Shown in pieces: positions 1 to 32,009 of a stretch of 64,000 nucleotides of DNA (positions within the stretch are counted from its first letter, which is position 1; every line of letters begins with the position of its first letter). Both the position numbers and the translations under genes were made by a program. The notes under the pieces are model-generated. The model saw only the letters and a list, made by a program, of their open reading frames with translations. It was not told the origin of the DNA and did not search any database. Where the stretch lies: the IMG/VR virus record IMGVR_UViG_3300034104_003795, positions 1-64,000 of that record, one strand, 5' to 3'.

Positions 1-1615
1 TTCTTACAAAATCATAATAAGCAAAATTAGCTACTTCTCTAAATTCAGGTCTTGCCAATGTTTTACTTAATGAGAATCTATACTTTACTTTATCTAAATT
101 ATAAGAAAGGTTTAATGATGGTAAAATATCTAAATACTCTCTATTCACATTTACTTTACTTCCACTAAAATCTGCGGTATTAACATTGAATAGATTATAC
201 TCACCTCTTAAACCTGTATTTAGTTTCCACTTTCCCCATTCGTTTTCATACATTGAGTAAAGAGAACCTAAATCAAAATCGGCAGTGTATCTATCCGTAT
301 TATTTGTTATTTCATCCAACATATCAGTTGAAAGATATCTGAATATCCTTGCATTAAAGCCTCTAATCTTTTTTAGGTAACCACCACCTATTTTAATTTT
401 ACCAAAATCTTTGTTGATATTACCATTAAAACTATTCTCATCCATTACACTCCAAAAACGATATGTATCTCTCCATGCAGTAGCATAAGGTTCGTTTACA
501 CCTAATGATTTTGTAATTGGATTAACTCTATAATCTGGTTGTTCTCTGAATATAAAATTATATCCTAAATTGAAATCTAATGTTTTAATCTTCCCATCAA
601 ATTGAGAATTGATAACAACATTATTAATATGGTTAGATGAATTACTTAAAACATTTTGAACATTATCAAAGTTATCGCCATTACGAGTTAAATATGTATC
701 ATCCGCCTGATAGTTTACTAATGTTTTCCAGCTATATCGGTTTTTACCTAAATAAGTTAAGTTTAATAAACTATTTGCGGAAAATCTTTTCGTAAACAAA
801 GTATCTCTATAATCATATGCCAATTCAGTTGATGATTGATAATCAGTTCTTTCAATATAATTTAATCCAAATGTATTTCTAATTGTTGAACTAAACAATG
901 CATTAAATTTGTTTTTCTTTAAACCAAATGATAATCCACCATTTAAGTTTGGTGATGATGTAAACCCTTCTACAATTGGATTACCAAATTGTTTTGTGAA
1001 TAATCTTTTATCACCATTACTACTAATACGATATTTGTAAGTGGATGGGAATGTGGAAGGGAATTCGGTAGCTTGAACTAACTTAAAATCTTTAAGAGAT
1101 GAAACCAAACCCCAACCACTTCCCAATGAGATATTGAAAAAGTTATCGGATACTTCTTTTGTTGTAATTTGTACCAATCCACCACTCCAATCGCCCGGTT
1201 GGTTTGCGGATGCTGATTTGGCAACTATAATATTATCAATTAATGATGTTGGAATTATATCAAATGAAAATGCTCTCCTATCAGGTTCGGTTGATGGTAG
1301 GAGTGTTTTGTTTAGGATAGCTGAATTATATCTATCTGCCAATCCTCTTACCAATACAAACTTATCGTTTTGAATTGTTACACCACTTACTCTTTTAAGT
1401 GCATCACCAACATTTCTATCAGGTGTTTTTTTAATAAAATCTATTGATACTCCATCCGATACTACGGATGAATTACGAATGGTTGTTATTACAGCTACTT
1501 CTGTAGATTTCTTACCCGCTGAACGGACTGTAATTGTGGATAGTTGTTTGGAAAATAATGTGTCTTGTGAATACGTTAGAAATGGAAGTAACATTAATAA
1601 AAGAAACGCTCTCAT
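1..1615 (-). CDS. TonB-dependent outer-membrane receptor, Bacteroidota type; runs off the left window edge; absent from ORF track
   Basis: Hand translation from ATG at 1615: MRAFLLLMLLPFLTYSQ signal peptide, then plug-domain motifs DGVSIDFIKKTPDRNVGDALKRVSGVTIQNDKFVLVRGLADRYN and FSFDIIPTSLIDNIIVAKSASANQPGDWSGGLVQITT. Confidence 0.85.
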   Translation of the reverse strand, partial: MRAFLLLMLLPFLTYSQDTLFSKQLSTITVRSAGKKSTEVAVITTIRNSSVVSDGVSIDFIKKTPDRNVGDALKRVSGVTIQNDKFVLVRGLADRYNSAILNKTLLPSTEPDRRAFSFDIIPTSLIDNIIVAKSASANQPGDWSGGLVQITTKEVSDNFFNISLGSGWGLVSSLKDFKLVQATEFPSTFPSTYKYRISSNGDKRLFTKQFGNPIVEGFTSSPNLNGGLSFGLKKNKFNALFSSTIRNTFGLNYIERTDYQSSTELAYDYRDTLFTKRFSANSLLNLTYLGKNRYSWKTLVNYQADDTYLTRNGDNFDNVQNVLSNSSNHINNVVINSQFDGKIKTLDFNLGYNFIFREQPDYRVNPITKSLGVNEPYATAWRDTYRFWSVMDENSFNGNINKDFGKIKIGGGYLKKIRGFNARIFRYLSTDMLDEITNNTDRYTADFDLGSLYSMYENEWGKWKLNTGLRGEYNLFNVNTADFSGSKVNVNREYLDILPSLNLSYNLDKVKYRFSLSKTLARPEFREVANFAYYDFVR

Positions 1616-1658
1616 AAAGTTATTTTAGGTTAGTTCCTCAATAACTATGAGAGCGTTT
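1604..1658 (-). promoter_or_regulatory. RNA hairpin sequestering the TBDR start codon
   Basis: AAACGCTCTCAT(1604-1615)+AGTTATT(1618-1624) is the reverse complement of AATAACT+ATGAGAGCGTTT(1640-1658). Confidence 0.7.
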
Positions 1659-1688
1659 GTCTAAATAGGTTATTTTAATATTAACAAA

Positions 1689-1904
1689 TTATGAAGAAAT
1701 TCCACAAAGTGTTAAAAACTCCTTTGCATTATGTATAACATCTTCTGATTTGAACTTTCTTAACATAGCTTCTGCTATTTCTTTTCTATTGGCCATATCA
1801 TCTACCATACGAAGTATTTCAGCAACACCCACAACCATATCTCTATCATTCTCATGTCCCTGTCCAACTTCTACTTCGTTGATTAAACTACTTAACTTTA
1901 TCAT
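1689..1904 (-). CDS. small protein with MIKLSSLINE N-terminus (probable virion-internal protein)
   Basis: Internal Met of track ORF 1689..1991 follows the upstream stop directly; N-terminus resembles the neighbours' MIKLTNILNE. Confidence 0.55.
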   Translation of the reverse strand: MIKLSSLINEVEVGQGHENDRDMVVGVAEILRMVDDMANRKEIAEAMLRKFKSEDVIHNAKEFLTLCGISS

Positions 1905-1905
1905 A

Positions 1906-2625
1906 TTATTTACAGGTTTTCCAGCCACCACCTTTTGATTTGTAGTTTTTTGCAGCCCATCCATTTGCATAAGCCGATGGATATACATCAAACTTCTTTT
2001 TAGCTGCAGCTTTAGATGCTGACCATTTAGCCGGGTCAGTTGGACAATTCTTTTCTAAGAATAATTCCATTTTTTGTTCTACGGTTAATTTCATATTTTC
2101 GTTTTTCTTTTTACCAGCACAATGTGCTTTTTGTGAGAAACCTTTTGGGTTACTACAATTTATTGAGTTCTTATATTTTTGAGACCATTTCTCATCAATC
2201 CCCTCACTAGCTCCTGTCTTTACAAACGTTGGTTTTTGACCTTTTGATTTTTCTCCACCTTTTTTAGCATCCCCTGCTTTAGATTGTGCAGCTCTTTTTC
2301 TTTTTACAAACGAAGCTCTACCATCTTTACCTAATTTATCAGCTTTTGCATTTGATAAACAGGCTGCATAGGCAGAACCTTTTTTAGAATCTCCACATTT
2401 TCCAACCTTCTCACCTTTGGTATTGTATCTATCCCAACCACCAGTTGGTCCACTTCCAAACCATTTACGAAGGTCTTCGCTAATTGGTGTATTATCATGC
2501 CCGCATTTGTGACATAGGTAAGGTTGAGTACCACCATCGGATATATCCCAATGCCAATTACATGAATCACAAGTAACTACATTAGCGTTCACACCTTCAT
2601 TTAATATATTAGTTAGTTTTATCAT
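1906..2625 (-). CDS. modular basic protein: MIKLTNILNE leader, CxxC/CxxC Zn finger, several Lys-rich modules (last is DUF5872-like)
   Basis: CDSC..CHKC; modules start after ISE, IDE, FLE; C-terminal KFDVYPSAYANGWAAKNYKSKGGGW. Confidence 0.6.
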   Translation of the reverse strand: MIKLTNILNEGVNANVVTCDSCNWHWDISDGGTQPYLCHKCGHDNTPISEDLRKWFGSGPTGGWDRYNTKGEKVGKCGDSKKGSAYAACLSNAKADKLGKDGRASFVKRKRAAQSKAGDAKKGGEKSKGQKPTFVKTGASEGIDEKWSQKYKNSINCSNPKGFSQKAHCAGKKKNENMKLTVEQKMELFLEKNCPTDPAKWSASKAAAKKKFDVYPSAYANGWAAKNYKSKGGGWKTCK

Positions 2626-2898
2626 TTATTTATAAAAATTGTTATAAATATGTTGCTTTATTTGAATTGGCATTCTTAATTTTCTATTTTCTAAATAATT
2701 ATCTAATTTTACTCCTTTAACAAAATACTTAAATGTAAAATTTGCATTTGGTTTTGATTTTAGTGTTATATCTACCAACGCATTTCCATTTTTATCCCAC
2801 CCTTTACTTGGATATGATAGTATAGTATCTTTGCTAAATTCTTCAAACGATACTTTTTTATCTTTTACTTCATTTAATATATTAGTTAGTTTTATCAC
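2626..2898 (-). CDS. hypothetical protein, MIKLTNILNE N-terminus, GTG start
   Basis: 30 nt at the 5' end (2868-2897) identical to 2595-2624. Confidence 0.55.
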   Translation of the reverse strand: MIKLTNILNEVKDKKVSFEEFSKDTILSYPSKGWDKNGNALVDITLKSKPNANFTFKYFVKGVKLDNYLENRKLRMPIQIKQHIYNNFYK

Positions 2899-3004
2899 TT
2901 TCTAATTTCTTTAAAATTGCTAAATTAGCTTTTACTAATTCTAATTTTTTAATACCACTTCTACGGCTTCTCATTGCTCTTGGTTTCTTTGCTTTACTTC
3001 CCAT
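2882..3004 (-). CDS. 40-aa very basic peptide (not in ORF track)
   Basis: MGSKAKKPRAMRSRRSGIKKLELVKANLAILKKLESDKTN; fills the gap between genes. Confidence 0.4.
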   Translation of the reverse strand: MGSKAKKPRAMRSRRSGIKKLELVKANLAILKKLESDKTN

Positions 3005-3007
3005 AAA

Positions 3008-3736
3008 TTATTTAGTGAATACACCTTTTTTAATCATTTTATCTAATATATTTGCACAAGCTATATCTAATGCTTTTTTAGTTGAAATACTAATAGTTGA
3101 TTGGTTAAACTTAATCGGGTCTATTGAAGCATCTGAAACTAATGTTAATTGTCTATTTGTTTTAGCCTCACCCAAACCAGATGCTGCGATGATTGAACCA
3201 TTTTCAGCATTTGTGAAACGAACCTGTAAACCTAAACGAGTTACCAAATTATCTTTGATACCATCTTTTAAATTTATTGTTTCATCTTCGGATACTGAAT
3301 AATCATATACTTCAATTTCAACAAAGTAATGTGCTAATTTAATCTTTCCTCTACCTTCAATTTTGTTTTCAGAAATACCAGCATTTGATGCTTTGAATTG
3401 AGCAACCATTCTGTTCTTAATTTCTGTTTTATCTTCGGTGAATTCAAATCTATTAAGGTTATCCAAATATTCCAATACGATATTTGCAACACCCAATCCA
3501 ACTCTCTTTTCTTTTAATTCAGGATACATTTCGTACACTTCTTCACCAATACCACATTTAAGGATTTGAATATACTTCTTTGGACCTTCGTAATCTAAAT
3601 ATGCAGATATATCTTTCTTTTTTTCAAAATCTGCTTTGAATTCTTCTGTTTTAGTACTTCCTATTGTTTGAGCATGTAGGACACCCACACCACTCGTAAT
3701 TAACAATATACCTAATAATACGATTAATTTTTTCAT
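3008..3736 (-). CDS. CsgG/HfaB-like exported protein
   Basis: Signal peptide ..VLHA-Q; GLGVANIVLEYLDNLNRFEFTE, AHYFVEIEV and LGLQVRFTNAENGSIIAASGLGEA follow the CsgG-family pattern. Confidence 0.65.
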   Translation of the reverse strand: MKKLIVLLGILLITSGVGVLHAQTIGSTKTEEFKADFEKKKDISAYLDYEGPKKYIQILKCGIGEEVYEMYPELKEKRVGLGVANIVLEYLDNLNRFEFTEDKTEIKNRMVAQFKASNAGISENKIEGRGKIKLAHYFVEIEVYDYSVSEDETINLKDGIKDNLVTRLGLQVRFTNAENGSIIAASGLGEAKTNRQLTLVSDASIDPIKFNQSTISISTKKALDIACANILDKMIKKGVFTK

Positions 3737-3760
3737 ACATAAATAATTTATTATAAATAT

Positions 3761-3788
3761 AAAAAAAGGGAGAAACGATGTTCTCCCC
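3761..3788 (-). terminator. intrinsic terminator whose U-tract abuts an ATATTTATA motif
   Basis: GGGAGAA-ACGATG-TTCTCCC stem with A7 on +; near-identical copy at 5193-5220. Confidence 0.75.
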
Positions 3789-3792
3789 TAAT

Positions 3793-4269
3793 TTACTTTA
3801 CATTTGGGTCTTCTAGATTTTTGATATATTCATCAATCAATCTACTTACTGCTTCAGGCTTTTCATCAGCCTTAAACTTAACCTTTATTTTAGCCATCCC
3901 TGCTTCACTTGGATTATATCCTGAATCAACTTCAATACCTTTGATATTGTGTTCGTATCCTTTTTTCTTAAATAAACCTAATAAAGATTTTTTAAGACTG
4001 GATACTTCCTTTTCTTCATCACCAAATATAAGTCTACAAGTAAACTCAATATCTAGCTCATCTAATCCAATAGATGAATGGTCCGCTAAAATATAAAGAG
4101 GTACAACCAAATCCTTACCACCTATATTAAAGGAAGTAGTTTTGGGTGTACCATCTTCATTGAAATAGTTTCGGAGAGCATTAATATGCTGTCTTTCACT
4201 TATACCTTGAGAAACCATAGCGGCCTCTAATAGACCGCCAACTAGTTCCTCTACATTTAATCTTGCCAT
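3793..4269 (-). CDS. DUF2589-like protein (partner of the adjacent DUF2589)
   Basis: LVGGLLEAAMVSQ..VPLYILADHSSIGLDELDIEF resembles DUF2589 pair members. Confidence 0.55.
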   Translation of the reverse strand: MARLNVEELVGGLLEAAMVSQGISERQHINALRNYFNEDGTPKTTSFNIGGKDLVVPLYILADHSSIGLDELDIEFTCRLIFGDEEKEVSSLKKSLLGLFKKKGYEHNIKGIEVDSGYNPSEAGMAKIKVKFKADEKPEAVSRLIDEYIKNLEDPNVK

Positions 4270-4293
4270 AATATAACCTTTATTTTTTAATTA

Positions 4294-4890
4294 TTACTTT
4301 GCTTCTTCAGTAAGTGGAATTAAAGATGGTTCTAACATTTGAGTTAGGTAATCTGATAATTTCAACATACCTTCAGTTGCTGGTAATTGTTCAGCATGTA
4401 CTTTTACATTGTATTTAGCTGAGTTGTCAGTACTTCTAGTGTTCTCTTTGTTTGTAGCTACTTTACCAGAAATTTTTGCATTCCAGCTCATACCCCAAAA
4501 TCTACCACCAGCTGATACTTCAACACTGCTTTCAGTTTTTACATCACTTTTTTCTGTCTCTGAAGTTTTTACTTCCATAGCAAATTCAATATCTGCTGAA
4601 GTGATTGCTAATGAAGGAAGTGGTACTAATGGTAACATAGGAACTTTACTATACAATTTTTGTATAGTTTGTTGACCTGTTGCACCATCGGTTACAACTC
4701 TGTTCATTTCAACATCTAAAGAACGTGCTTTAGTTTTTTTAGTTTTCTCGTCCGTTACGAATGCTACTTCAGAAATGTATTTCCAAGTTACTTCGTTTAA
4801 TTTTGCTTGACCTTTTGCCATACCAACAATCGGTGAAACAATCAAATCTTCAATAGGAAGACCTGCGAATTGGTCTGCGATACCTGCCAT
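4294..4890 (-). CDS. DUF2589 family protein
   Basis: QFAGLPIEDLIVSPIVGMAKGQAKL..VPMLPLVPLPSLAITSADIEFAMEV..DNSAKYNVKVHAEQ. Confidence 0.7.
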   Translation of the reverse strand: MAGIADQFAGLPIEDLIVSPIVGMAKGQAKLNEVTWKYISEVAFVTDEKTKKTKARSLDVEMNRVVTDGATGQQTIQKLYSKVPMLPLVPLPSLAITSADIEFAMEVKTSETEKSDVKTESSVEVSAGGRFWGMSWNAKISGKVATNKENTRSTDNSAKYNVKVHAEQLPATEGMLKLSDYLTQMLEPSLIPLTEEAK

Positions 4891-4965
4891 AAATTTAAAT
4901 TTTTATAATTAATTTTTTGTAACTTGTTCCAACATAAATATCCCAAAAAAGATAAAACAACCCAA

Positions 4966-5169
4966 TTATCCAAATTTTACTATTCCTTTGTACTCTTTTT
5001 TGATTTTTTCTATCTCAATAAGTGCTTCTTTATATTTTTCCTTTATTTCATCGTTTACCGTAAAATCCAAAACGGTCTCACAATGTGGACAGGCTGAGAC
5101 TGGGTGTTTGAATATAAATTCTAAAGTTAAACCAATCGGTTTTTTACAAGCTGGACAGGGTAGAGCCAT
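4966..5169 (-). CDS. Zn-ribbon protein
   Basis: CPAC...CPHC. Confidence 0.6.
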   Translation of the reverse strand: MALPCPACKKPIGLTLEFIFKHPVSACPHCETVLDFTVNDEIKEKYKEALIEIEKIKKEYKGIVKFG

Positions 5170-5192
5170 AACATTTTATTTATTATAAATAT

Positions 5193-5220
5193 AAAAAAGG
5201 GAGAAACTATGTTCTCCCTT
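5193..5220 (-). terminator. intrinsic terminator plus ATATTTATA motif
   Basis: GGGAGAA-ACTATG-TTCTCCC. Confidence 0.75.
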
Positions 5221-5257
5221 AAATACTTCCGCCCTTCCTACAGTTAAAGGAAATATA

Positions 5258-5536
5258 TTATCCTAATTCTTCTTCAGTCCCAGCATCCAATTTGTTCTTA
5301 TCGTGTTCCGCTTTTCTATTGATGTACTTATCAACCGAAGCGATACCAAATGCGCCCAATGTGATTACTAAGAATCCGTTGAAAATATATTCGTTGATTA
5401 GTAATTCCTTACCCATATAACCTGTTATCAAGTCTACGAATAATGCAAGTACCATACAACCAAATGATAAGAAACCAACTACTGATTTTTCGTTGATATC
5501 ATTGTTGTCTTTGAATAATTCTTTAAAGAATCCCAT
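5258..5536 (-). CDS. two-TM small membrane protein (holin-like topology)
   Basis: Two hydrophobic segments and a charged C-tail. Confidence 0.5.
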   Translation of the reverse strand: MGFFKELFKDNNDINEKSVVGFLSFGCMVLALFVDLITGYMGKELLINEYIFNGFLVITLGAFGIASVDKYINRKAEHDKNKLDAGTEEELG

Positions 5537-5579
5537 AATTTTACAATTTAATTAATTAATGTAACAATACATAACTAAT

Positions 5580-6239
5580 TTATCCAGCTTGTTCAGCATC
5601 TTCATCTTTAATCTTTCCACACTTCAAACATTCTTCATCGCCATCTCCGTCTAAGTCACCCCAAACGTGCTCACATTGTCTATGTGCAAAATATACATCA
5701 ATCTTACCATCACCATCAAAATCAATACCATCCATTACACCATCACCATCTTCATCTACCTCAATACCGGTTCTTGGTTGAGCTTTAAAAGGGCTTTCAA
5801 TAATGTGAGGATTATTTGGTTCTGATTTTACTTCCACTTTATTTGCTTCGATAAGGTTAATTTCATGTGCGTTTTTTGCAGCTTGTACAAATGCATCTGG
5901 AATCAATGGAGTGTTATTTGGTGGAGTTACAGGCATATCAGCAGTATTGCTTAATGATGTACCATCTTCCTCATCCATCTTTTGTACTAACATCTTATCC
6001 TTATCGGTATCACTAAACCAATAATCTATAATCTTACCATAAGAACCGATGAAAGCTCCTAATAACAATAATAGAAGTTCTTTCCATTCTCCTTCTATTG
6101 CAGATTTGTTAAATATAGCAAAGAACATTCCTGCCATAATAAACATAAATCCACCCAACACCATAGCAGTAATCCACCATCTACGGCTCATCATTTTATT
6201 TAATAGGTCTTTAAACCCACTTGGTTGTTGCTCTGCCAT
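5580..6239 (-). CDS. two-TM membrane protein with C-terminal DxDGDG Ca-binding repeats and Cys/His ligands
   Basis: DEDGDGVMDGIDFDGDGKID, CEHVWGDLDGDGDEECLKC. Confidence 0.6.
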   Translation of the reverse strand: MAEQQPSGFKDLLNKMMSRRWWITAMVLGGFMFIMAGMFFAIFNKSAIEGEWKELLLLLLGAFIGSYGKIIDYWFSDTDKDKMLVQKMDEEDGTSLSNTADMPVTPPNNTPLIPDAFVQAAKNAHEINLIEANKVEVKSEPNNPHIIESPFKAQPRTGIEVDEDGDGVMDGIDFDGDGKIDVYFAHRQCEHVWGDLDGDGDEECLKCGKIKDEDAEQAG

Positions 6240-6994: not shown

Positions 6995-7348
6995 TTAATT
7001 TATTATCAGTAACGTTTTACCTATTTGGACACTATTCTCATCTTCCAAAGATAAATATAAATATCTAACAGGTAACGATTTTGTGTATAACTTTAAGGAA
7101 TTTTCCCCAATTTTACCAATTATTCTTTCTCTAGTAACTACTTGCTGACCTACTGAATCAAAAAGAGTAAGTGTATATATTCCTTCCGATTTTAAAGTGA
7201 ACTTAAATTGTTCTCCGTTTCCAATAGATGCTTCTTTAACAGAAAATATATCTTCTACTTTTGGTGGTGGGGTTGGTTCTACTTCTACTTTTCTACAAGA
7301 GATTATAAAAACAACACAACACAATAAGATTAATATTAACTTTTTCAT
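6995..7348 (-). CDS. lipoprotein with T9SS-CTD/FlgD-like Ig domain (paralogue of neighbour)
   Basis: Lipobox IISC; YTLTLFDSVGQQV..GENSLKLYTKSLPVRYLYLSLED. Confidence 0.6.
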   Translation of the reverse strand: MKKLILILLCCVVFIISCRKVEVEPTPPPKVEDIFSVKEASIGNGEQFKFTLKSEGIYTLTLFDSVGQQVVTRERIIGKIGENSLKLYTKSLPVRYLYLSLEDENSVQIGKTLLIIN

Positions 7349-9636
7349 TATTTCATTTTTACTTTTAATGTGTTTCCGCTTTTATTTACTGCATCGGTGA
7401 ATGAAATTGAAATTAAACCTAATACATTGTTCAATTTTGTTTGTGGTTTGAAACTGATTTTATATTCGGTAGTATTATCTAAAACCCCACCATCAGTAAT
7501 TAAAGAACCAAAATTTACATAATCACCTTTATCAGTTCCATAATTAGTTGGTGACCCCTTTGTCTTATAAGATACACTACTAAATTTCAATAAACTATTA
7601 TCGTAATTTAATTTGAATTGAGTTCCAACTAATTCTTGTTGTAATGGGTCAATCTTAATATATGCAGTAACACTATCTCCAATAATTTCAGTTATTATAG
7701 ATGCGTTTATTTGATTTGATATTGGTAAACTCATTGGTATAACACTCATACTTCTAATAGAAGAACCTGATATCGCAGGTGGAGTTTGTTGTGCTGAATG
7801 TGATAAATTTACATCACCTTTCCAAGTTACACTAACATTATATGTGTTATTAAGTGTTCCACTATTCAAATTAAATGGATATAAACTTCTAGTGTAATTG
7901 AATTGTGTATTCCAATTTGATTTTGTAATCGCATCATATTCCGATTTTCCATACAACTTCATCAAATAAGTTAATGTTGAATATTCATTAATAGGTTGTA
8001 CACCTATTAAATGTTGTAATAATTTATAGGTATCGGTTTCATTAAATACACCATTACCATCTACATCTGCGTTCATAAATTGAATACCAGATGTAAACTC
8101 TAATCCACTTTCGTTTCCAAATATTCCACTATTTGATAATTCTTTAAATGCCAAATACACATCGGATACACTTACTACACTACTATATAAATTATTTAGT
8201 TCGGTTTGATTAGTATATGATAAATCAATTCCATGTTGCTTAAACATCACATTAGGTGTAAATGTAAACTCTGCACTCAACCCCCAAAAAAATCCAGCTC
8301 TTCTTATATTAGATGAAAATGATGAACCTGCAAAATTAAGTTCCGTTGGTGTATAAATCCAATATGCGGCCCAAGTTCCATCATCCCATTGATAAGTTAC
8401 AGCCCCATTCCACAAATCAAATAATTGTAAACTTGTAACACTACTTGCTGAAGTACCTTGTGGGAATTCTCTTTTATCAATTAGGATTTGATATCTTTGG
8501 GATTGTGATTCATAATCATATACTACGCACCATTCTACTTGTCCGCCTGATGTTGTTGCTCTAACACCATTACCATTTACCTTTACAGTATCTAAATCAT
8601 TTGTTAAATCAACTTTACCTAATCCACTTATAGCTCTTGATGTGTTAGTTGTTGTTCCCCACACATTGTTTACAAAAGTATTTGCTTTTGCTGTAAATTT
8701 AGTTTCATCTACATTACTTCCAAAATCAAAATTAAATCTTGCTGTTAATACTTCCCCATTTGAATGTGTTACTGAATTTGTATAGAATTCTGTAAATGTT
8801 GCATCATCAGGGTTAGTCCAAGTTCCGTATTCAATTACATAAGGGCAACTAAATCCATTCGGTAAATCATTCCATTGAGAACCGTTCCATTTTGTTACCG
8901 CATAATCTTCGTTACCACTATTGTTTGGTTCACCAGGTGCCCAGTTATTATATTGACCTTGTATGTTTCCGGCTGTTTGTCCGTTTGATGTTTTTATTAG
9001 AGTTCCAGCTTCAGGACCGGCATCAATTCTCCATTGTCCCTCAACAGCTTCATCCGTTAATGCAAACCAAATGTTTGTTTGTGGAACATTGTTAAACACA
9101 AACGCATCTTCATCTGCGGAAGTGATTGTTACCAAATATCCTTGTTGCCCTTTAAATGTGGTATTTAACGCTGCCGCCCTTGCACCCGTATAACTTGTTC
9201 CTGTTGATATTGGTCTATAAAAATGACCATTTGTTCCATTGTAAAAGAACCCCGTTGGATTAACCGTAGCTGCTACCGATAATGCAATATTACCTCTTAC
9301 TGAACCTGTGTTTACTTTTAAAGATGCTAATGCCGTATTGATATTAGCCATTGTTCCCGTTACCACTAAACGAGTCTTATTACCTGCTAATGTAAATCCA
9401 CTAGCTGCAGTTAGACCTGTTGTTGTGGTTAAGTTAAATGTAGTACCTGTTGGTGGATTAACTAAACTGATTGAAGCTAATAGAGTTGCGGTTGAACCAA
9501 ATCCACTCAATACAAACCCACTCGCATCTTGTCCGTTTGTGGATGGTAAAAAAGATTTAGAGTCCGGTGCAGATACACTCTGACCGAACCCTAAATTTGT
9601 AATTAATAAAAATAAAAATATTAATAAGTTTCTCAT
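7348..9636 (-). CDS. exported multidomain protein: C-type lectin, dockerin-like repeat, C-terminal cohesin-like domain
   Basis: Signal peptide; GYLVTITSADEDAF..WFALTD..YNNWAPGEPNNSGNEDYAVTKWNGSQWNDLP (CTL); ADVDGNGVFNETDTYKLLQHLIG; WKGDVNLSH; LVGTQFKLNYDNSLLKF. Confidence 0.7.
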   Translation of the reverse strand: MRNLLIFLFLLITNLGFGQSVSAPDSKSFLPSTNGQDASGFVLSGFGSTATLLASISLVNPPTGTTFNLTTTTGLTAASGFTLAGNKTRLVVTGTMANINTALASLKVNTGSVRGNIALSVAATVNPTGFFYNGTNGHFYRPISTGTSYTGARAAALNTTFKGQQGYLVTITSADEDAFVFNNVPQTNIWFALTDEAVEGQWRIDAGPEAGTLIKTSNGQTAGNIQGQYNNWAPGEPNNSGNEDYAVTKWNGSQWNDLPNGFSCPYVIEYGTWTNPDDATFTEFYTNSVTHSNGEVLTARFNFDFGSNVDETKFTAKANTFVNNVWGTTTNTSRAISGLGKVDLTNDLDTVKVNGNGVRATTSGGQVEWCVVYDYESQSQRYQILIDKREFPQGTSASSVTSLQLFDLWNGAVTYQWDDGTWAAYWIYTPTELNFAGSSFSSNIRRAGFFWGLSAEFTFTPNVMFKQHGIDLSYTNQTELNNLYSSVVSVSDVYLAFKELSNSGIFGNESGLEFTSGIQFMNADVDGNGVFNETDTYKLLQHLIGVQPINEYSTLTYLMKLYGKSEYDAITKSNWNTQFNYTRSLYPFNLNSGTLNNTYNVSVTWKGDVNLSHSAQQTPPAISGSSIRSMSVIPMSLPISNQINASIITEIIGDSVTAYIKIDPLQQELVGTQFKLNYDNSLLKFSSVSYKTKGSPTNYGTDKGDYVNFGSLITDGGVLDNTTEYKISFKPQTKLNNVLGLISISFTDAVNKSGNTLKVKMK

Positions 9637-13244: not shown

Positions 13245-14056
13245 TTAGATTTCGTTTTTATATGTTTCTATTGTTTCCTTTAATTCAGAAAACACAGCTC
13301 CTACTTCATCATCGGATTCAAATGAACCTCTAATATCAATTTCTTTCATTTTTTGGAGCATGGATTCTATTTTAATTTGAGTACCGATTTGTCTATCATC
13401 GTAATCTCTAATAGTATCCATTAATTGTTCATTTTGCTTGACAAAGTTTATCCCTCTAATTAATAGAAGGATATTAAATATTATTGAAGCTGGTAATAAT
13501 ATTATTAGTAAGAATCCAATTAAATAATCCATAAAATTTTAATTAATATACAAATATACAATTTTTTATTGAAACTACCAAATTTAAGCTTCGCCCATTT
13601 TACCACCAAACATAGAACTATTAAAATAATCTATTTCCATTTCGTTTCTGGCTTTTTTTATTTCGTTTTGGGCCCATTCCATTTTAGCCTGAAATCTATC
13701 ATCAAGTTTTTCTTCCTTAATTTTTTTAGTTTCTATTAACTCATCTACTAATGCTTCTAATAACAATTGTAAGGTTAATATTCTTTCGTTTTGTGCTGCT
13801 AATAATTCTTTCATGCTAATTCAATTGAGCCACTATAAGCGGTTTGAAAGATTTGTGATAGTTCTGAATCCAAATCTTTTTTATATTCTATACCAAATGC
13901 TTTTCTTACTGATAACGATGTATATCCCATAGCTCCCGCCATTCTCATACACATTCTTTTGTATTCCCAAACATCCATATCGTTTGGTACTTCAAATTCT
14001 ATTTTAGAAGCTTCTCTATTTTCTTCTTCATCTATGATAAATATTAATTTTGCCAT
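13245..14056 (-). CDS. run of three small hypothetical CDSs (13245-13532 N-terminal TM/coiled coil; 13584-13814; 13811-14056)
   Basis: Tightly packed ORFs on the main coding strand. Confidence 0.55.
13551..13582 (-). promoter_or_regulatory. Bacteroidota primary-sigma promoter
   Basis: Minus strand TTTGG-N19-TATATTTG. Confidence 0.75.
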
Positions 14057-28748: not shown

Positions 28749-31700
28749 ATGAAAAAAATCGGAAAATTTCTCCTTATGGTAGTGATAACACTATTATCAT
28801 TTGGAGCAAGTGCGCAAGAAACTACCTCTGAAATTCAGGGTTTGGTTTCTGATGGAAAAGCCGGATTAGCAGGTGTAACAATTGTAGCTACTCACCAGCC
28901 AACGGGTACGAAGTATAGTACTTCTTCTCGTACTGATGGTAGATACAACTTGCCAAACTTGAAAATCGGTGGACCGTATTCAATTCACGTAACATCAATT
29001 GGTTTCAAAGCAGAACATCAAGACGATATTACATTGTTATTGGGTCAGTCACACAAGGCAAACTTTATTTTGAAAGAAGCATCAACAACTTTGAAAGAAG
29101 TAGTTGTAACTTCAGGACAAAGTAAGGTATTTAACTCTAGCCGTAATGGTTCTCAAGAGATTATCAACAGACAATTGATTGAGAGAATACCAAACGTTAA
29201 TAGAAGCTGGAAAGATTTAGTTAAATTAGTACCTTCACAAAACAACTTATCATTTGGTGGTTTATCTTCTCAATTGAATAACGTTACTTTGGATGGTGCT
29301 AACTTCAATAACTCTTTCGGTTTAGGTGATGGTACATTGGGTGGTCAAACTGGAGCACAACCAATCTCATTGGATGCGATTGAGCAAATCCAAGTTAACG
29401 TTTCACCGTTTGATGTTAAGTTCGGTGGTTTCGCAGGTGGTTCAATCAACACCGTAACTCGTAGTGGTAAGAACCAATCATTCGGTTCGGTTTACCAATT
29501 CTTTAAGAATAAAGATTTACAGGGTTACAAAGTTGGTGATGTAACTTTACCAAAGCAAGATTTCACTTATGATTTAAAAGGATTCACCGCAGGTGGAGCA
29601 ATTGTTAAAAACAAATTGTTCTTCTTTGTAAATGGTGAACAAGAAAGTAGAATGGAACCTGGTACACAATGGGTAGCATCTGATGCCAACAATACACCAA
29701 ATGGTATCAACGTATCTCAAGCTAAAGCAGCTGATTTGGATGCATTGAGAAAGTTCTTAATTGAAAAATATAATTACGATCCAGGTGCATATCAAGGATA
29801 CCAATATGGTTCAGTATCAAAAAGATTGACTACTAAATTAGATTGGAATATTAATAGTAAAAATTCATTCTCATTGAAATATACACTATTACGTTCATCA
29901 GCAGATATTCCAGCATCTAACTCACAATCGGTAAATGCATCAAATGGTAGAAGACCAAGTACAACTTCAATGCCGTTTTATGGTGGTGGTTATACGATTA
30001 ATAACAATGCGGATATTATTATTGGTGAGTTAAACACTAGATTCTCAAATAACGCTTCCAACAAATTACAAATTGGATACACTAAATTGAGAGATTTTAG
30101 AGGAACATTGACTAGTGGTAATTTCCCACAAGTAGATATATTAGATGGTAACGGTCAACCTTTCACAACTTTTGGTTATGAAAGATTTACTTATGGTAAC
30201 GTTTTAAATTCAGATGTAATTCAATTGAATAACATTTTCAACTTATATAAAGGTAAGCATGAATTTACATTCGGTACACAAAATTCATTTAAGAAATATT
30301 CAAATGGATTCTCACCTAACTATGCCGGAGCATTCCGTTTTAATAGTTTAGCTGATTTCTACGCATCTGCAGAAGGTACAAAACCGGCAGCTGCGTATGA
30401 TTTATCGTGGTCATTAACCGGTGATTTTCCGTTGGTTGGTCCAAAGAATACTGAATTAAGTTTATTTGCTCAGGACAAATTTAGAGTAAAAGATAACTTA
30501 ACAATCACTTACGGTTTGAGAGCGGATTATGTATCTTTCGCTGATAATTTCCTTTACAATCCAGTAGTTGATACATTATCTAAATTCTATGATGGTGTAA
30601 GATTAAATACAGGTTTAGCACCTAAAAATGCTTTACAACTTTCGCCTAGAATTGGTTTCAACTGGGATGTGAATAATGACCAAACATTGCAAGTTCGCGG
30701 TGGTACTGGTTTATTTCAAGGACCTCCACCATTCGTTTGGATATCTAACCAAGCATCTAATAGTGGTATGGCATTATTCGGAAGTATTACAAACGCAACC
30801 GGATATATGTTTAATCCAGATATTAATGCATATAGACCAACTCCAACACCTGGTTTATCTAGAGCATATTCTCTTAACGTAACTGACCCTAACTACAAAT
30901 TCCCTCAAGTATGGAAATCAACGTTAGCAGTAGATAAGAAAGTATTAGGATGGACCGTAACTGCGGAAGGAACTTATATTAAGAACATCAACGCTACTGT
31001 ATTCCAAAACGTTGCATTACCTTCAACAGGAAATATTACGTTAAGTGATGGTAGAACTCGTTTCATCAAACGTTCAGTTTACGATGCAACTGGAACTGCT
31101 CAAACATCAGCTAATCCAAACATTGGTAACGCAATTTATATGACTAATGCAAACGTTGGTTATGTATTATTCGGAACATTGCAGGTTCAAAGACAATTTA
31201 AGAATTTAGCGGTAAACGCTTCTTACACTCGTCAAACTGCAAAAGATGGTACAATCAATGGTTCTACTGCATTTACAATGTGGGGAGCTAGACCAACATC
31301 TACAAACCCTAATAACTTTGAAGAAGGTTTTTCAAACAACTACCTACCTCATAGAATCATAGGTTCATTTGTTTATGGTAAAGAGTTTATTAAGAATACA
31401 AGAACTTCAATTGGTTTATTATATGAAGCTTCTCCAAATTCTCCACAATCTTCTCTATCTTACACATACGCGGGTGATTTGAATAATGATGGTTTCAATG
31501 GTAATGATTTAATCTTCGTTCCTAAAGATGCATCTCAAATCAAATTAACTAACGCATCTGCAGTAGGTGGTGTAGCTGATACTCGTACACAAGAAGAATT
31601 ATGGAATCAATTAGATGCTTTCATTTCAAATAACAAATACCTTTCAACTCGTAGAGGCCAGTTTGCTGAAAGACAAGCATTAGTATTACCTTGGGTTCAT

Positions 31701-32009
31701 AGATTAGATTTGAATTTCACACAAGATGTTTATATCAAAGTTAAAGATACAAAACATACTTTAAGATTCACAGCCGATATCTATAACTTCACAAACTTCA
31801 TCAGCAAAGATTGGGGTGTAAACCAAACTCCAACAACTGTAACTCCACTTAACTTCGTAAGATTGGATACTGATGGAAAAACTCCGGTATTCTCATTCCC
31901 TTATTTAGATGGAAGAAACAAAGTTCCGTTTACTGATTCATTCAGAGATAACGTAGGATTTAGTTCTCGCTACCAAATTCAATTGGGTGTAAGATATATC
32001 TTTAACTAA
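28749..32009 (+). CDS. TonB-dependent receptor with N-terminal carboxypeptidase-regulatory-like domain (Oar-like)
   Basis: Signal peptide; GRYNLPNLKIGGPYSI; LDGANFNNSFGL; ISLDAIEQIQVNVSPFDV..GGSINTVTRSG; C-terminal IQLGVRYIFN. Confidence 0.92.
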   Translation: MKKIGKFLLMVVITLLSFGASAQETTSEIQGLVSDGKAGLAGVTIVATHQPTGTKYSTSSRTDGRYNLPNLKIGGPYSIHVTSIGFKAEHQDDITLLLGQSHKANFILKEASTTLKEVVVTSGQSKVFNSSRNGSQEIINRQLIERIPNVNRSWKDLVKLVPSQNNLSFGGLSSQLNNVTLDGANFNNSFGLGDGTLGGQTGAQPISLDAIEQIQVNVSPFDVKFGGFAGGSINTVTRSGKNQSFGSVYQFFKNKDLQGYKVGDVTLPKQDFTYDLKGFTAGGAIVKNKLFFFVNGEQESRMEPGTQWVASDANNTPNGINVSQAKAADLDALRKFLIEKYNYDPGAYQGYQYGSVSKRLTTKLDWNINSKNSFSLKYTLLRSSADIPASNSQSVNASNGRRPSTTSMPFYGGGYTINNNADIIIGELNTRFSNNASNKLQIGYTKLRDFRGTLTSGNFPQVDILDGNGQPFTTFGYERFTYGNVLNSDVIQLNNIFNLYKGKHEFTFGTQNSFKKYSNGFSPNYAGAFRFNSLADFYASAEGTKPAAAYDLSWSLTGDFPLVGPKNTELSLFAQDKFRVKDNLTITYGLRADYVSFADNFLYNPVVDTLSKFYDGVRLNTGLAPKNALQLSPRIGFNWDVNNDQTLQVRGGTGLFQGPPPFVWISNQASNSGMALFGSITNATGYMFNPDINAYRPTPTPGLSRAYSLNVTDPNYKFPQVWKSTLAVDKKVLGWTVTAEGTYIKNINATVFQNVALPSTGNITLSDGRTRFIKRSVYDATGTAQTSANPNIGNAIYMTNANVGYVLFGTLQVQRQFKNLAVNASYTRQTAKDGTINGSTAFTMWGARPTSTNPNNFEEGFSNNYLPHRIIGSFVYGKEFIKNTRTSIGLLYEASPNSPQSSLSYTYAGDLNNDGFNGNDLIFVPKDASQIKLTNASAVGGVADTRTQEELWNQLDAFISNNKYLSTRRGQFAERQALVLPWVHRLDLNFTQDVYIKVKDTKHTLRFTADIYNFTNFISKDWGVNQTPTTVTPLNFVRLDTDGKTPVFSFPYLDGRNKVPFTDSFRDNVGFSSRYQIQLGVRYIFN

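What the first reader, a model, noticed from the sequence alone, without database searches (positions are those of the whole stretch)
1604..1658. 19-bp hairpin that buries the AUG of the first TonB-dependent receptor
Seen: the 5' UTR contains an exact antisense copy of the first 12 coding nt plus 7 nt of the initiation region (2-nt bulge, 15-nt loop). This is too long to be chance. Established: T4 uses such hairpins to silence late genes on read-through transcripts. Inference: translation of this receptor is gated by transcript start choice, temperature, a ligand or a trans-acting RNA/protein.
Basis: partly seen in the sequence, partly recalled or inferred. Interest (0 to 1): 0.6.

Follow-up and report, generated by a model that had tools for sequence, protein, structure and literature searches.

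The report
Start-codon-burying hairpin on phage receptor gene
A lake jumbo phage that probably infects Aquirufa carries a host-derived outer-membrane receptor gene whose start codon is locked in a conserved RNA hairpin, most likely so that it is translated only from its own promoter, as in phage T4.

Summary
On the minus strand, window 1658-1604 folds into a 12+7 bp hairpin with a 2-nt bulge and a 15-nt loop. Its 3' arm is the AUG (1615-1613) plus codons 2-4 of a TonB-dependent-receptor-like gene.

It is not chance. It is the strongest upstream/start complementarity among 353 gene starts of this 274-kb phage, and no internal control reaches it. In 31 related phage leaders the upstream arm co-varies with codons 2-4.

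The gene and the lipoprotein gene after it derive from Aquirufa-like Bacteroidota. The bacterial copies lack the hairpin, so the phages evolved it.

Two blocks stay sequence-invariant while the stem co-varies. One of them (1650-1639) abuts the anti-AUG and sits where this phage's promoters sit.

A second gene of the same phage has the full T4 gene-e layout: co-varying arms with the phage's recurrent promoter motif invariant between them.

Best reading: the hairpin silences translation on read-through transcripts, and the gene's own transcripts start inside the hairpin. The silencing structure is well supported. The internal promoter is inferred; no transcript-start data could be obtained.

This is a new member of a known kind, in a phylum whose ribosomes ignore Shine-Dalgarno sequences.

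The parts
1647..1658 (-). Outer 5' arm (anti-start): exact antisense of the AUG plus the next 9 coding nt
   Evidence: It co-varies with codons 2-4 in homologues.
1640..1646 (-). Inner-stem 5' half (7 nt), part of the invariant Block B
   Evidence: G-C / A-U / G-U alternation with its partner is seen in the alignment.
1625..1639 (-). 15-nt loop, sequence-conserved in the close clade. The loop motif occurs in this context only once in the genome
1618..1624 (-). Inner-stem 3' half
1616..1617 (-). 2-nt bulge (UU) just before the AUG
1604..1615 (-). Outer 3' arm: AUG (1615-1613) plus codons 2-4 of the receptor gene
1639..1650 (-). Block B: 12-nt sequence-invariant block that includes the anti-AUG triplet. 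Candidate promoter -7-type element. The start site implied by the Bacteroidota -7 box geometry is about 1634, giving a 19-nt leader that lacks both 5' arms
   Evidence: Geometry of the -7 box is from PMC6847099. The promoter role is an inference.
1677..1694 (-). Block A: 18-nt block conserved in all phage homologues whatever the upstream gene. It aligns with a block upstream of the Aquirufa orthologues, so it is a candidate host regulator site. In the window it overlaps the stop codon of the upstream gene
2..1615 (-). TonB-dependent-receptor-like gene (signal peptide, Plug, OMP_b-brl_3 barrel). It is cut by the contig end at 538 aa; complete relatives are 750 or 825 aa
1689..1904 (-). Upstream co-oriented 71-aa ORF with no family match. 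Its stop lies 30 nt before the 5' arm, too far for a terminating ribosome to melt the stem
3754..3789 (-). Nearest upstream terminator (3789-3766), followed by the class-2 promoter-like motif (3761-3754). No terminator-like site on this strand fits an operon boundary between here and the hairpin, so read-through into the receptor gene is expected

Best explanation
The hairpin is a selected mRNA structure that occludes the start codon of a host-derived receptor gene in a Bacteroidota jumbo phage.

Any transcript that enters from the upstream phage operon carries the anti-start arm. The AUG and codons 2-4 are then locked in a roughly -20 to -28 kcal/mol helix. Translation should be shut off, all the more so in a host whose ribosomes do not use Shine-Dalgarno pairing and depend on an open start region.

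The gene's own promoter is proposed to lie at the invariant Block B (1650-1639), at the junction of the 5' arm and the loop. Its transcripts would begin in the loop (about 1634), lack both 5' arms and be translated normally.

This is the T4 gene e / soc / 49 / I-TevI logic. Here it insulates a captured two-gene host cassette (receptor plus lipoprotein, with a host-like upstream regulatory block) from the phage's own transcription programme.

Shown: the structure, its statistical exceptionality, its covariation, its absence in the bacterial orthologues, the invariant blocks, and a second T4-like hairpin in the same phage.

Inferred: that Block B is an active promoter, that read-through transcripts exist, and that translation is repressed on them.
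For: Structure and rarity:
- -27.7 kcal/mol, z = -6.0.
- Strongest anti-start duplex of 353 starts, beyond all 787 internal controls.
- Start-region P(unpaired) is 0.17, in the lowest 2% of 274 phage genes, whose mean is 0.51.

Covariation:
- In 31 leaders aligned to a covariance model, 81.8% of cells are paired, against 46-57% when the partner is slid.
- 54 cells show double-sided change, against 17.8 +/- 4.7 in shuffles (0 of 500 reach it). Eight pairs show compensatory change (also on a plain MAFFT alignment).
- At least nine different codon-2-4 sequences each have a matching upstream arm.
- Native arm duplexes average -10.8 kcal/mol and swapped arms -5.7. In 30 of 56 leaders the native arm beats 95% of swaps.
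- G.U cells outnumber A.C cells 42 to 21, which points to the mRNA strand.

Phage innovation:
- The closest bacterial orthologues (Aquirufa, 60-72% identity, with the same downstream lipoprotein gene at 72%) have open starts and background-level complementarity.

Internal promoter:
- Block B is invariant while the stem co-varies, and it persists in homologues that lost the anti-start arm.
- It begins 35 nt before the ATG and its conserved TTG ends 23 nt before it; the phage's own -7-type motifs start 22-30 nt before their ATGs.
- It matches the class-2 core at 8 of 11 positions and scores in the top 0.33% of genome positions with a class-2 matrix.
- It also resembles the host -7 box plus one inserted base.
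- With a 22-nt leader the start region opens to 0.52, the genome average.

Precedent in the same phage:
- The gene at genome 164531(-) has co-varying arms around its AUG, with the recurrent class-2 motif invariant between them, in 42 distinct leaders.

Read-through:
- On the minus strand the scan lists two further terminator-like sites between the class-2 promoter at 3761 and the hairpin, 4240-4218 and 4865-4843; both lie above 3761, so none lies between the promoter and the hairpin.
- Leaders insulated by an upstream terminator have weaker anti-start arms: median -6.9 against -11.6, p = 0.04, not corrected for phylogeny.

T4 mechanism: PMC3014915. Start-region structure tunes translation in SD-less Bacteroidota: PMC6847099.
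Against: - No transcript 5' end is known. The metatranscriptome material was short assembled contigs that cannot show starts or strands.
- Block B is not a canonical Bacteroidota -7 box: its TA and TTG are one base further apart than in the consensus. It departs from the class-2 motif at two or three positions. A matrix score at the 0.33% level is expected by chance in roughly a fifth of 90-nt regions.
- Neither Block A nor Block B recurs anywhere else in the genome. They are therefore not a general phage promoter class.
- MAFFT aligns the host -7 box a few bases upstream of Block B rather than onto it.
- Some homologues keep a moderate anti-start arm although a strong terminator sits just upstream (L057, L060, L063).
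- About 20 of 56 leaders have a weak arm or none.
Confidence: 0.5

Rival explanations
1. Obligate 5'-UTR riboregulator. All receptor transcripts start upstream of the hairpin, for example near Block A. The hairpin is then opened on demand by a trans-acting protein or small RNA that recognises the invariant Block B and loop sequence, as Com opens the mom start region in phage Mu.
For: - The loop and Block B are sequence-invariant in the close clade, as expected of a recognition site.
- Both blocks are unique to this leader.
- The arm persists in some leaders that sit directly behind a terminator.
- The stem is too stable to open unaided.
Against: - No candidate partner was found. The genome holds no second copy or complement of the arm or loop outside this locus.
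- The small ORF upstream is not conserved among homologues, so there is no linked activator gene.
- No canonical promoter was found at or upstream of Block A.
- The same phage demonstrably uses the promoter-between-arms design elsewhere.
Confidence: 0.25
2. Intrinsic terminator or attenuator of the upstream operon that happens to overlap the receptor start. The U-rich signal-peptide codons would serve as the U tract.
For: - The stem is followed by a U-rich run and preceded by an A-rich run in many homologues.
- It lies at the end of a co-oriented gene string that has no other terminator.
- This is compatible with the main model as an added effect.
Against: - Neither terminator scan picks it up.
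- The phage's evident terminators are short GC-rich stems with 4-6-nt loops. This element is a 19-bp AU-rich stem with a bulge and a 15-nt conserved loop.
- A terminator does not need to track codons 2-4 base for base, nor to include the AUG in every lineage.
- Several homologues have a canonical terminator upstream and still keep the hairpin.
Confidence: 0.1
3. DNA-level palindrome: an operator for a dimeric DNA-binding protein, or a cruciform or recombination site.
For: The element is a near-perfect inverted repeat and folds equally well on either strand. Block A is itself partly palindromic in some homologues.
Against: - The outer arms co-vary rather than being conserved, which is the signature of pairing and not of protein recognition.
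- Wobble pairs favour the mRNA strand by 2 to 1.
- One arm is always the AUG plus codons 2-4.
Confidence: 0.05
4. RNA thermometer that melts at higher temperature.
For: The AU-rich stem holding the AUG resembles fourU/ROSE logic in outline.
Against: The predicted free energy is -43.5 kcal/mol at 5 C and still -13.8 at 60 C. Start-region accessibility stays unchanged at 0.16-0.17 across that range. The habitat is lake water.
Confidence: 0.03

Closest known systems
Phage T4 translational-silencing hairpins of genes e, soc, 49 and I-TevI (review PMC3014915)
   Same: - The start codon is sequestered by an upstream complementary segment.
- Long transcripts from upstream promoters carry the inhibitory arm.
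- A promoter-like conserved block sits in or next to the DNA that encodes the 5' strand.
- The structure is conserved among related phages.
   Different: - The host is Bacteroidota, so there is no Shine-Dalgarno element to hide and only the AUG and early codons are paired.
- The silenced gene is a host-derived outer-membrane receptor, not a lysis, capsid or nuclease gene.
- The candidate internal promoter is gene-specific and unproven, whereas T4 uses its general late promoter.
- The timing may be reversed: silenced on phage-programme transcripts, expressed from a host-like promoter.
The hairpin at genome 164531(-) of the same phage
   Same: Same genome, same anatomy: an anti-start arm, a loop, and the AUG in the 3' arm. 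The arms co-vary across relatives and an invariant block lies between them.
   Different: There the invariant block is the phage's recurrent class-2 motif (about 20 copies in the genome). At the receptor gene the invariant block is unique and only resembles that motif.
Phage Mu mom translation-inhibition structure opened by Com (my own knowledge, not checked in a paper here)
   Same: A hairpin that contains the start codon; relief by a factor that binds just 5' of it is one of the rival readings.
   Different: No linked activator gene is conserved upstream, and no binding factor is known.
Start-region structure as the main tuner of initiation in Bacteroidota (F. johnsoniae, PMC6847099)
   Same: The host phylum lacks SD use. 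Genes generally keep the -20 to +20 region unpaired. This phage's genes do too: mean upstream complementarity is -6.0 kcal/mol at real starts and -7.6 at internal ATGs.
   Different: That work describes genome-wide tuning, not a dedicated co-varying silencer hairpin.

Membership tests
T4-type read-through-silencing hairpin (genes e / soc / 49 / I-TevI) | Start codon held in a helix with an upstream complementary segment | tested here: met
T4-type read-through-silencing hairpin (genes e / soc / 49 / I-TevI) | Structure maintained in related phages | tested here: met
   Covariation. It is present in about 30-35 of 56 distinct leaders.
T4-type read-through-silencing hairpin (genes e / soc / 49 / I-TevI) | A promoter lies between the 5' arm and the start codon, so the gene's own transcripts lack the 5' arm | tested here: inconclusive
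   The invariant Block B is in the right place. It resembles the class-2 motif and the host -7 box. It is non-canonical, unique in the genome and without start-site data.
T4-type read-through-silencing hairpin (genes e / soc / 49 / I-TevI) | Longer transcripts from upstream promoters run into the gene | tested here: inconclusive
   No terminator-like site lies between the class-2 promoter at 3761 and the hairpin. RNA-library contigs cover both sides at low depth but cannot show continuity or strand.
T4-type read-through-silencing hairpin (genes e / soc / 49 / I-TevI) | Translation is reduced on the long transcript relative to the short one | not testable with these tools
   In silico only: accessibility is 0.17 with the full leader and 0.52 with a 22-nt leader.
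Intrinsic (rho-independent) terminator | Short GC-rich stem, 3-8-nt loop, U tract immediately after the stem | tested here: not met
   Not found by the scans. The stem is 19 bp and AU-rich with a 15-nt loop. A U-rich run does follow it.
RNA thermometer (fourU / ROSE type) | Start region melts within the organism's temperature range | tested here: not met
   Still folded at 60 C in silico.
Known cis-regulatory RNA families (Rfam 15, riboswitches and leaders) | Match to a curated covariance model | tested here: not met
   Only one chance-level snoRNA hit elsewhere in window 1-4000.
Mu com/mom-type translational activation | Linked small activator gene immediately upstream, conserved together with the hairpin | tested here: not met
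   The upstream genes differ among homologues, and several have a terminator there instead.
TonB-dependent receptor (the gene being regulated) | Signal peptide, Plug domain and C-terminal beta-barrel | tested here: met
   Plug and OMP_b-brl_3 are above Pfam cut-offs. The match to TIGR01782 is below its cut-off. Long forms add a CarboxypepD_reg domain. Transport function was not tested.

The most novel reading that the evidence does not exclude
The leader is a gene-specific riboregulator that evolved in phages. Its invariant loop and Block B would be read on the RNA by a still-unknown phage or host factor that unlocks the AUG, giving conditional translation of a phage-borne nutrient receptor in a phylum that lacks SD-based control. 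That would be a new regulatory RNA class in Bacteroidota phages, not a T4-style promoter trick.
Probability: 0.2. Interest if true: 0.7.

Novelty: new member of a known kind. Interest (0 to 1): 0.5.

Why it matters
- It gives a covariation-backed example of start-codon sequestration in phages of Bacteroidota. In that phylum initiation does not use Shine-Dalgarno pairing, so an open start region is the main requirement.
- It shows a phage building a silencer inside a regulatory region captured from its host. The bacterial orthologues lack the hairpin, which speaks to how auxiliary host-derived genes are wired into a phage programme.
- Together with the second hairpin in the same genome, it suggests that the T4 promoter-between-arms design arose independently, or is far more widespread, in uncultivated freshwater jumbo phages.
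- It offers concrete constructs for testing translation control in a poorly studied system.
- It also points to Aquirufa as the likely host of a large clade of lake jumbo phages.

Tried and rejected
- Rfam scan of window 1-4000: nothing relevant.
- RNAalifold on a plain MAFFT alignment gave a poor consensus of -2.7 kcal/mol, because register shifts misalign the arms. I replaced it with an explicit structure count and a covariance-model alignment.
- Loop motif as a general phage promoter: rejected. It is unique in the genome. In IMG/VR it occurs in this context only in receptor leaders, and the other hits are chance or coding matches.
- Blocks A and B as recurrent motifs: rejected by matrix scans.
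- ECF-sigma or sigma-54 readings of the loop: considered by eye and dropped, because the spacing would place the transcript start beyond the AUG. No tool test was run.
- Translational coupling to the upstream ORF: rejected. The stop lies 30 nt before the arm, and the upstream genes are not conserved.
- Metatranscriptomes: four RNA runs hold only short low-depth contigs of related phages over this region, with no information on starts, strand or continuity.
- PHROGs, Pfam and NCBIfam gave nothing for the flanking small genes or the lipoprotein.
I redid the step from stored alignments by reference.
No alternative genetic code was needed.

Full report
**What is there**

The window is the first 64 kb of a 273,997-bp IMG/VR virus contig. 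It has about 31% G+C, and almost all genes lie on the minus strand.

The finding lies on the minus strand. Read as RNA, 1658-1647 is the exact antisense of the AUG (1615-1613) plus the next nine coding bases (1612-1604). An inner 7-bp stem (1646-1640 with 1624-1618) follows, closing a 15-nt loop (1639-1625). A 2-nt bulge (1617-1616) sits just before the AUG.

The ORF 1615..2(-) has a signal peptide, a Plug domain and an OMP_b-brl_3 barrel. It runs off the contig end at 538 aa. Complete relatives are 750 aa, or 825 aa with an added CarboxypepD_reg domain.

The ATG at 1615 is the first start after an in-frame stop. The signal peptide that begins there is conserved across the homologues, so the start is not in doubt.

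**Is it more than chance?**

The 106-nt region folds at -27.7 kcal/mol, against -11.3 +/- 2.7 for shuffles (z = -6.0, 0 of 200).

I called 353 ORFs in the whole genome. For each I computed the best duplex between the 84 nt upstream and the -4..+14 start segment.
- The receptor gene ranks first at -20.0 kcal/mol.
- None of 787 internal ATG controls reaches it; their minimum is -16.5.
- Real starts are on average less complementary to their upstream region than internal ATGs (-6.0 against -7.6). This is the expected avoidance of structure.
- With 100 nt of leader, the mean unpaired probability of -3..+10 is 0.17. That is in the lowest 2% of 274 phage genes, whose mean is 0.51.

**Conservation and covariation**

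IMG/VR holds at least 80 loci that encode this receptor at 66-100% identity. Named phage records hold only distant relatives.

In most of the 56 distinct leaders the AUG is again buried. Codons 2-4 differ between lineages, with at least nine different sequences, and the upstream arm changes to match.

On a MAFFT alignment with my explicit structure:
- 79.4% of cells pair, against 42-57% when the partner is slid.
- 43 cells carry changes on both sides, against 15.6 +/- 4.4 in shuffles (0 of 500).

On a covariance-model alignment of 31 leaders:
- 81.8% of cells pair.
- 54 cells carry changes on both sides, against 17.8 +/- 4.7 (0 of 500).
- Eight pairs show compensatory change.
- This alignment leans towards the model's structure, so the plain-alignment result matters too.

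A control that needs no alignment also supports pairing. Native upstream/start duplexes average -10.8 kcal/mol, and arms swapped between homologues average -5.7. In 30 of 56 leaders the native arm beats 95% of swaps.

Wobble cells favour the mRNA strand, with G.U 42 against A.C 21. About 20 leaders have a weak arm or none, so the feature is common but not universal.

**Where the gene came from**

The closest bacterial relatives are chromosomal genes of Aquirufa species (freshwater Spirosomataceae, Bacteroidota). They are 60-72% identical to every phage group.

In Aquirufa and in the complete phage loci the receptor gene is followed by a roughly 400-aa lipoprotein gene (72% identity). The phages therefore carry a host-derived two-gene cassette, and Aquirufa or a close relative is the likely host.

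The runs that hold the DNA are lake-water metagenomes.

The Aquirufa leaders have a canonical -7 box about 45 nt before the ATG. They have an open start region and only background complementarity, -5 to -11 kcal/mol. The hairpin is therefore a phage innovation.

**The phage's transcription signals**

Intergenic k-mer enrichment shows two recurrent upstream motifs.
- Class 1 is the canonical Bacteroidota promoter: a -33 TTTG and a -7 TAnnTTTG about 19-20 bp apart. It occurs in about 25 copies and agrees with a Bacteroidota host (consensus in PMC6847099).
- Class 2 is a TATATTTATA-like box without a -33 element. It often lies right behind a GC-rich terminator and 24-30 nt before an ATG, in about 20 copies.

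The receptor gene sits at the end of a class-2 unit. That unit has a terminator at 3789-3766, the motif at 3761-3754, and then four co-oriented ORFs. No terminator-like site lies between the motif and the hairpin. Read-through into the receptor gene is therefore expected.

**The invariant blocks**

The upstream genes of the homologues are unrelated to one another, and several leaders begin right after a terminator. Two blocks are nevertheless present in all of them.
- Block A is window 1694-1677. It aligns with a block upstream of the Aquirufa genes.
- Block B is window 1650-1639. It comprises the anti-AUG triplet, the inner-stem 5' half and the first loop bases.

Both blocks are unique in the genome.

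Block B stays fixed while the outer stem co-varies, and it persists where the anti-start arm is lost. It is therefore read as sequence, not only as a pairing partner.

Several observations point to a promoter role for Block B:
- Block B begins 35 nt before the ATG and its conserved TTG ends 23 nt before it; the phage's -7-type motifs start 22-30 nt before their ATGs.
- It matches the class-2 core at 8 of 11 positions, and it scores in the top 0.33% of genome positions. That is weak on its own.
- In the more host-like phage leaders it looks like the host -7 box with one inserted base. MAFFT, however, prefers a slightly different register.
- In Flavobacterium the G of the -7 box is at -5. Applied here, transcripts would begin at about 1634 and lack both 5' arms.
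- With such a leader, start-region accessibility rises to 0.52, the genome average.

**A second, clearer case in the same phage**

The 142-aa gene at genome 164531(-) has the same anatomy. It has 278 relatives in IMG/VR.

In 42 distinct leaders the arms around the AUG change together. For example, CATCCG with CGGATG becomes CATCGG with CCGATG. The class-2 motif stays invariant in the loop between the arms.

That is the layout described for T4 gene e. [quoted passage not shown] Early read-through transcripts are translated about 100-fold less (PMC3014915). So this phage lineage does use the promoter-between-arms design.

**Mechanism proposed**

Transcripts that enter from the upstream operon fold the hairpin and are not translated. 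Transcripts from a promoter at Block B, perhaps governed through the host-like Block A, start in the loop and are translated.

Leaders insulated by an upstream terminator have weaker anti-start arms (median -6.9 against -11.6 kcal/mol, p = 0.04). The homologues are not independent, so this is only a trend.

I put about 0.85 on the claim that the hairpin is a selected structure that represses initiation. I put about 0.5 on the full model with the internal promoter.

**Rivals**

- A 5'-UTR riboregulator opened by a factor that reads the invariant loop and Block B is not excluded (0.25). No partner, complement or linked activator gene was found.
- A terminator role may add to the main model but does not explain base-for-base tracking of codons 2-4. 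The element also looks nothing like the phage's terminators.
- A thermometer is disfavoured: the stem is predicted to stay folded from 5 to 60 C.
- A DNA-level operator is disfavoured by the covariation and by the strand bias of wobble pairs.
- No Rfam family matches.

**Limits**

- No transcript ends are known. The four RNA runs gave only short assembled contigs of related phages at low depth over 1-2400. These cannot show starts, strand or continuity.
- All energies are in silico.
- The ORF set is my own crude call.
- The covariation counts involve related sequences, so the shuffle counts are not probabilities.

**Novelty**

The mechanism class is known from T4 and its relatives. Phage-borne outer-membrane beta-barrels, including a TonB-dependent receptor in Lak phages, have been reported in huge phages (bioRxiv 10.64898/2026.10.24.761521).

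Three things are new here:
- The setting: Bacteroidota jumbo phages from lakes, in an SD-blind host phylum.
- The target: a captured host receptor cassette.
- The evidence that the silencer arose in the phage inside a host-derived regulatory region.

I rate it a new member of a known kind, with interest about 0.5.

Noticed in passing
G000:C1 164105-164640(-) (locus L173): A second start-burying hairpin, on a 142-aa gene of unknown function. The arms co-vary in 42 distinct leaders of 278 relatives. The recurrent class-2 promoter-like motif is invariant between the arms, and a GC-rich terminator lies just upstream. This is the full T4 gene-e layout.
   Followed up: yes
whole genome G000; e.g. 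window 3754-3761(-), 5190-5197(-), 13550-13560(-): Two recurrent upstream motif classes. Class 1 is the canonical Bacteroidota -33/-7 promoter (about 25 copies). Class 2 is a TATATTTATA-like box without a -33 element, often right behind terminators (about 20 copies). They look like a host-type and a phage-specific promoter class.
   Followed up: partly
loci L149-L156 (Aquirufa spp.); L006:5250-6452: The receptor gene and the following 400-aa lipoprotein gene are 60-72% identical to a chromosomal gene pair of Aquirufa. The phage therefore carries a host-derived two-gene cassette, and Aquirufa or a close relative is the likely host of this large lake phage clade.
   Followed up: partly
window 28749-32009(+) and the 405-nt gap before it: A second, larger receptor-like gene (CarboxypepD_reg, Plug, OMP_b-brl_4; 1086 aa) on the opposite strand. 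A class-1 promoter lies about 204 nt upstream, and a terminator-like hairpin plus a class-2-like box lie about 40 nt upstream. It has a long leader of unknown role.
   Followed up: no
G000:C1 85230-90220(-) (locus L255): A cluster of 25 tRNA genes covering 20 amino acids. My crude ORF caller placed spurious ORFs here.
   Followed up: yes
window 3793-4269(-) and 4294-4890(-): Two adjacent DUF2589 paralogues. They carry the highest contig depth in three of the four lake metatranscriptomes laid on window 1-6000. Depth from contigs is a poor measure of expression.
   Followed up: no
loci L002-L081: The phage receptor exists in a short form (750 aa, as in the window's clade) and a long form (825 aa) with an N-terminal CarboxypepD_reg domain, as in Aquirufa. 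The leader and signal peptide are shared, so the domain was lost within the phage clade.
   Followed up: partly
window 51152(-) start region (locus L174): A third gene start (107 aa) with a 14-bp upstream complement, -14.6 kcal/mol, within the top 1% of controls. It was not examined in relatives.
   Followed up: no
window 7348-9636(-): A 762-aa protein with C-type lectin and cohesin-like domains, possibly a host-binding structural protein.
   Followed up: no
window 1-2 / contig ends: The contig is called 100% complete, but it begins inside the receptor gene, and its far end does not continue that gene. About 212 codons and the lipoprotein gene are therefore missing or misjoined at the contig break.
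   Followed up: partly
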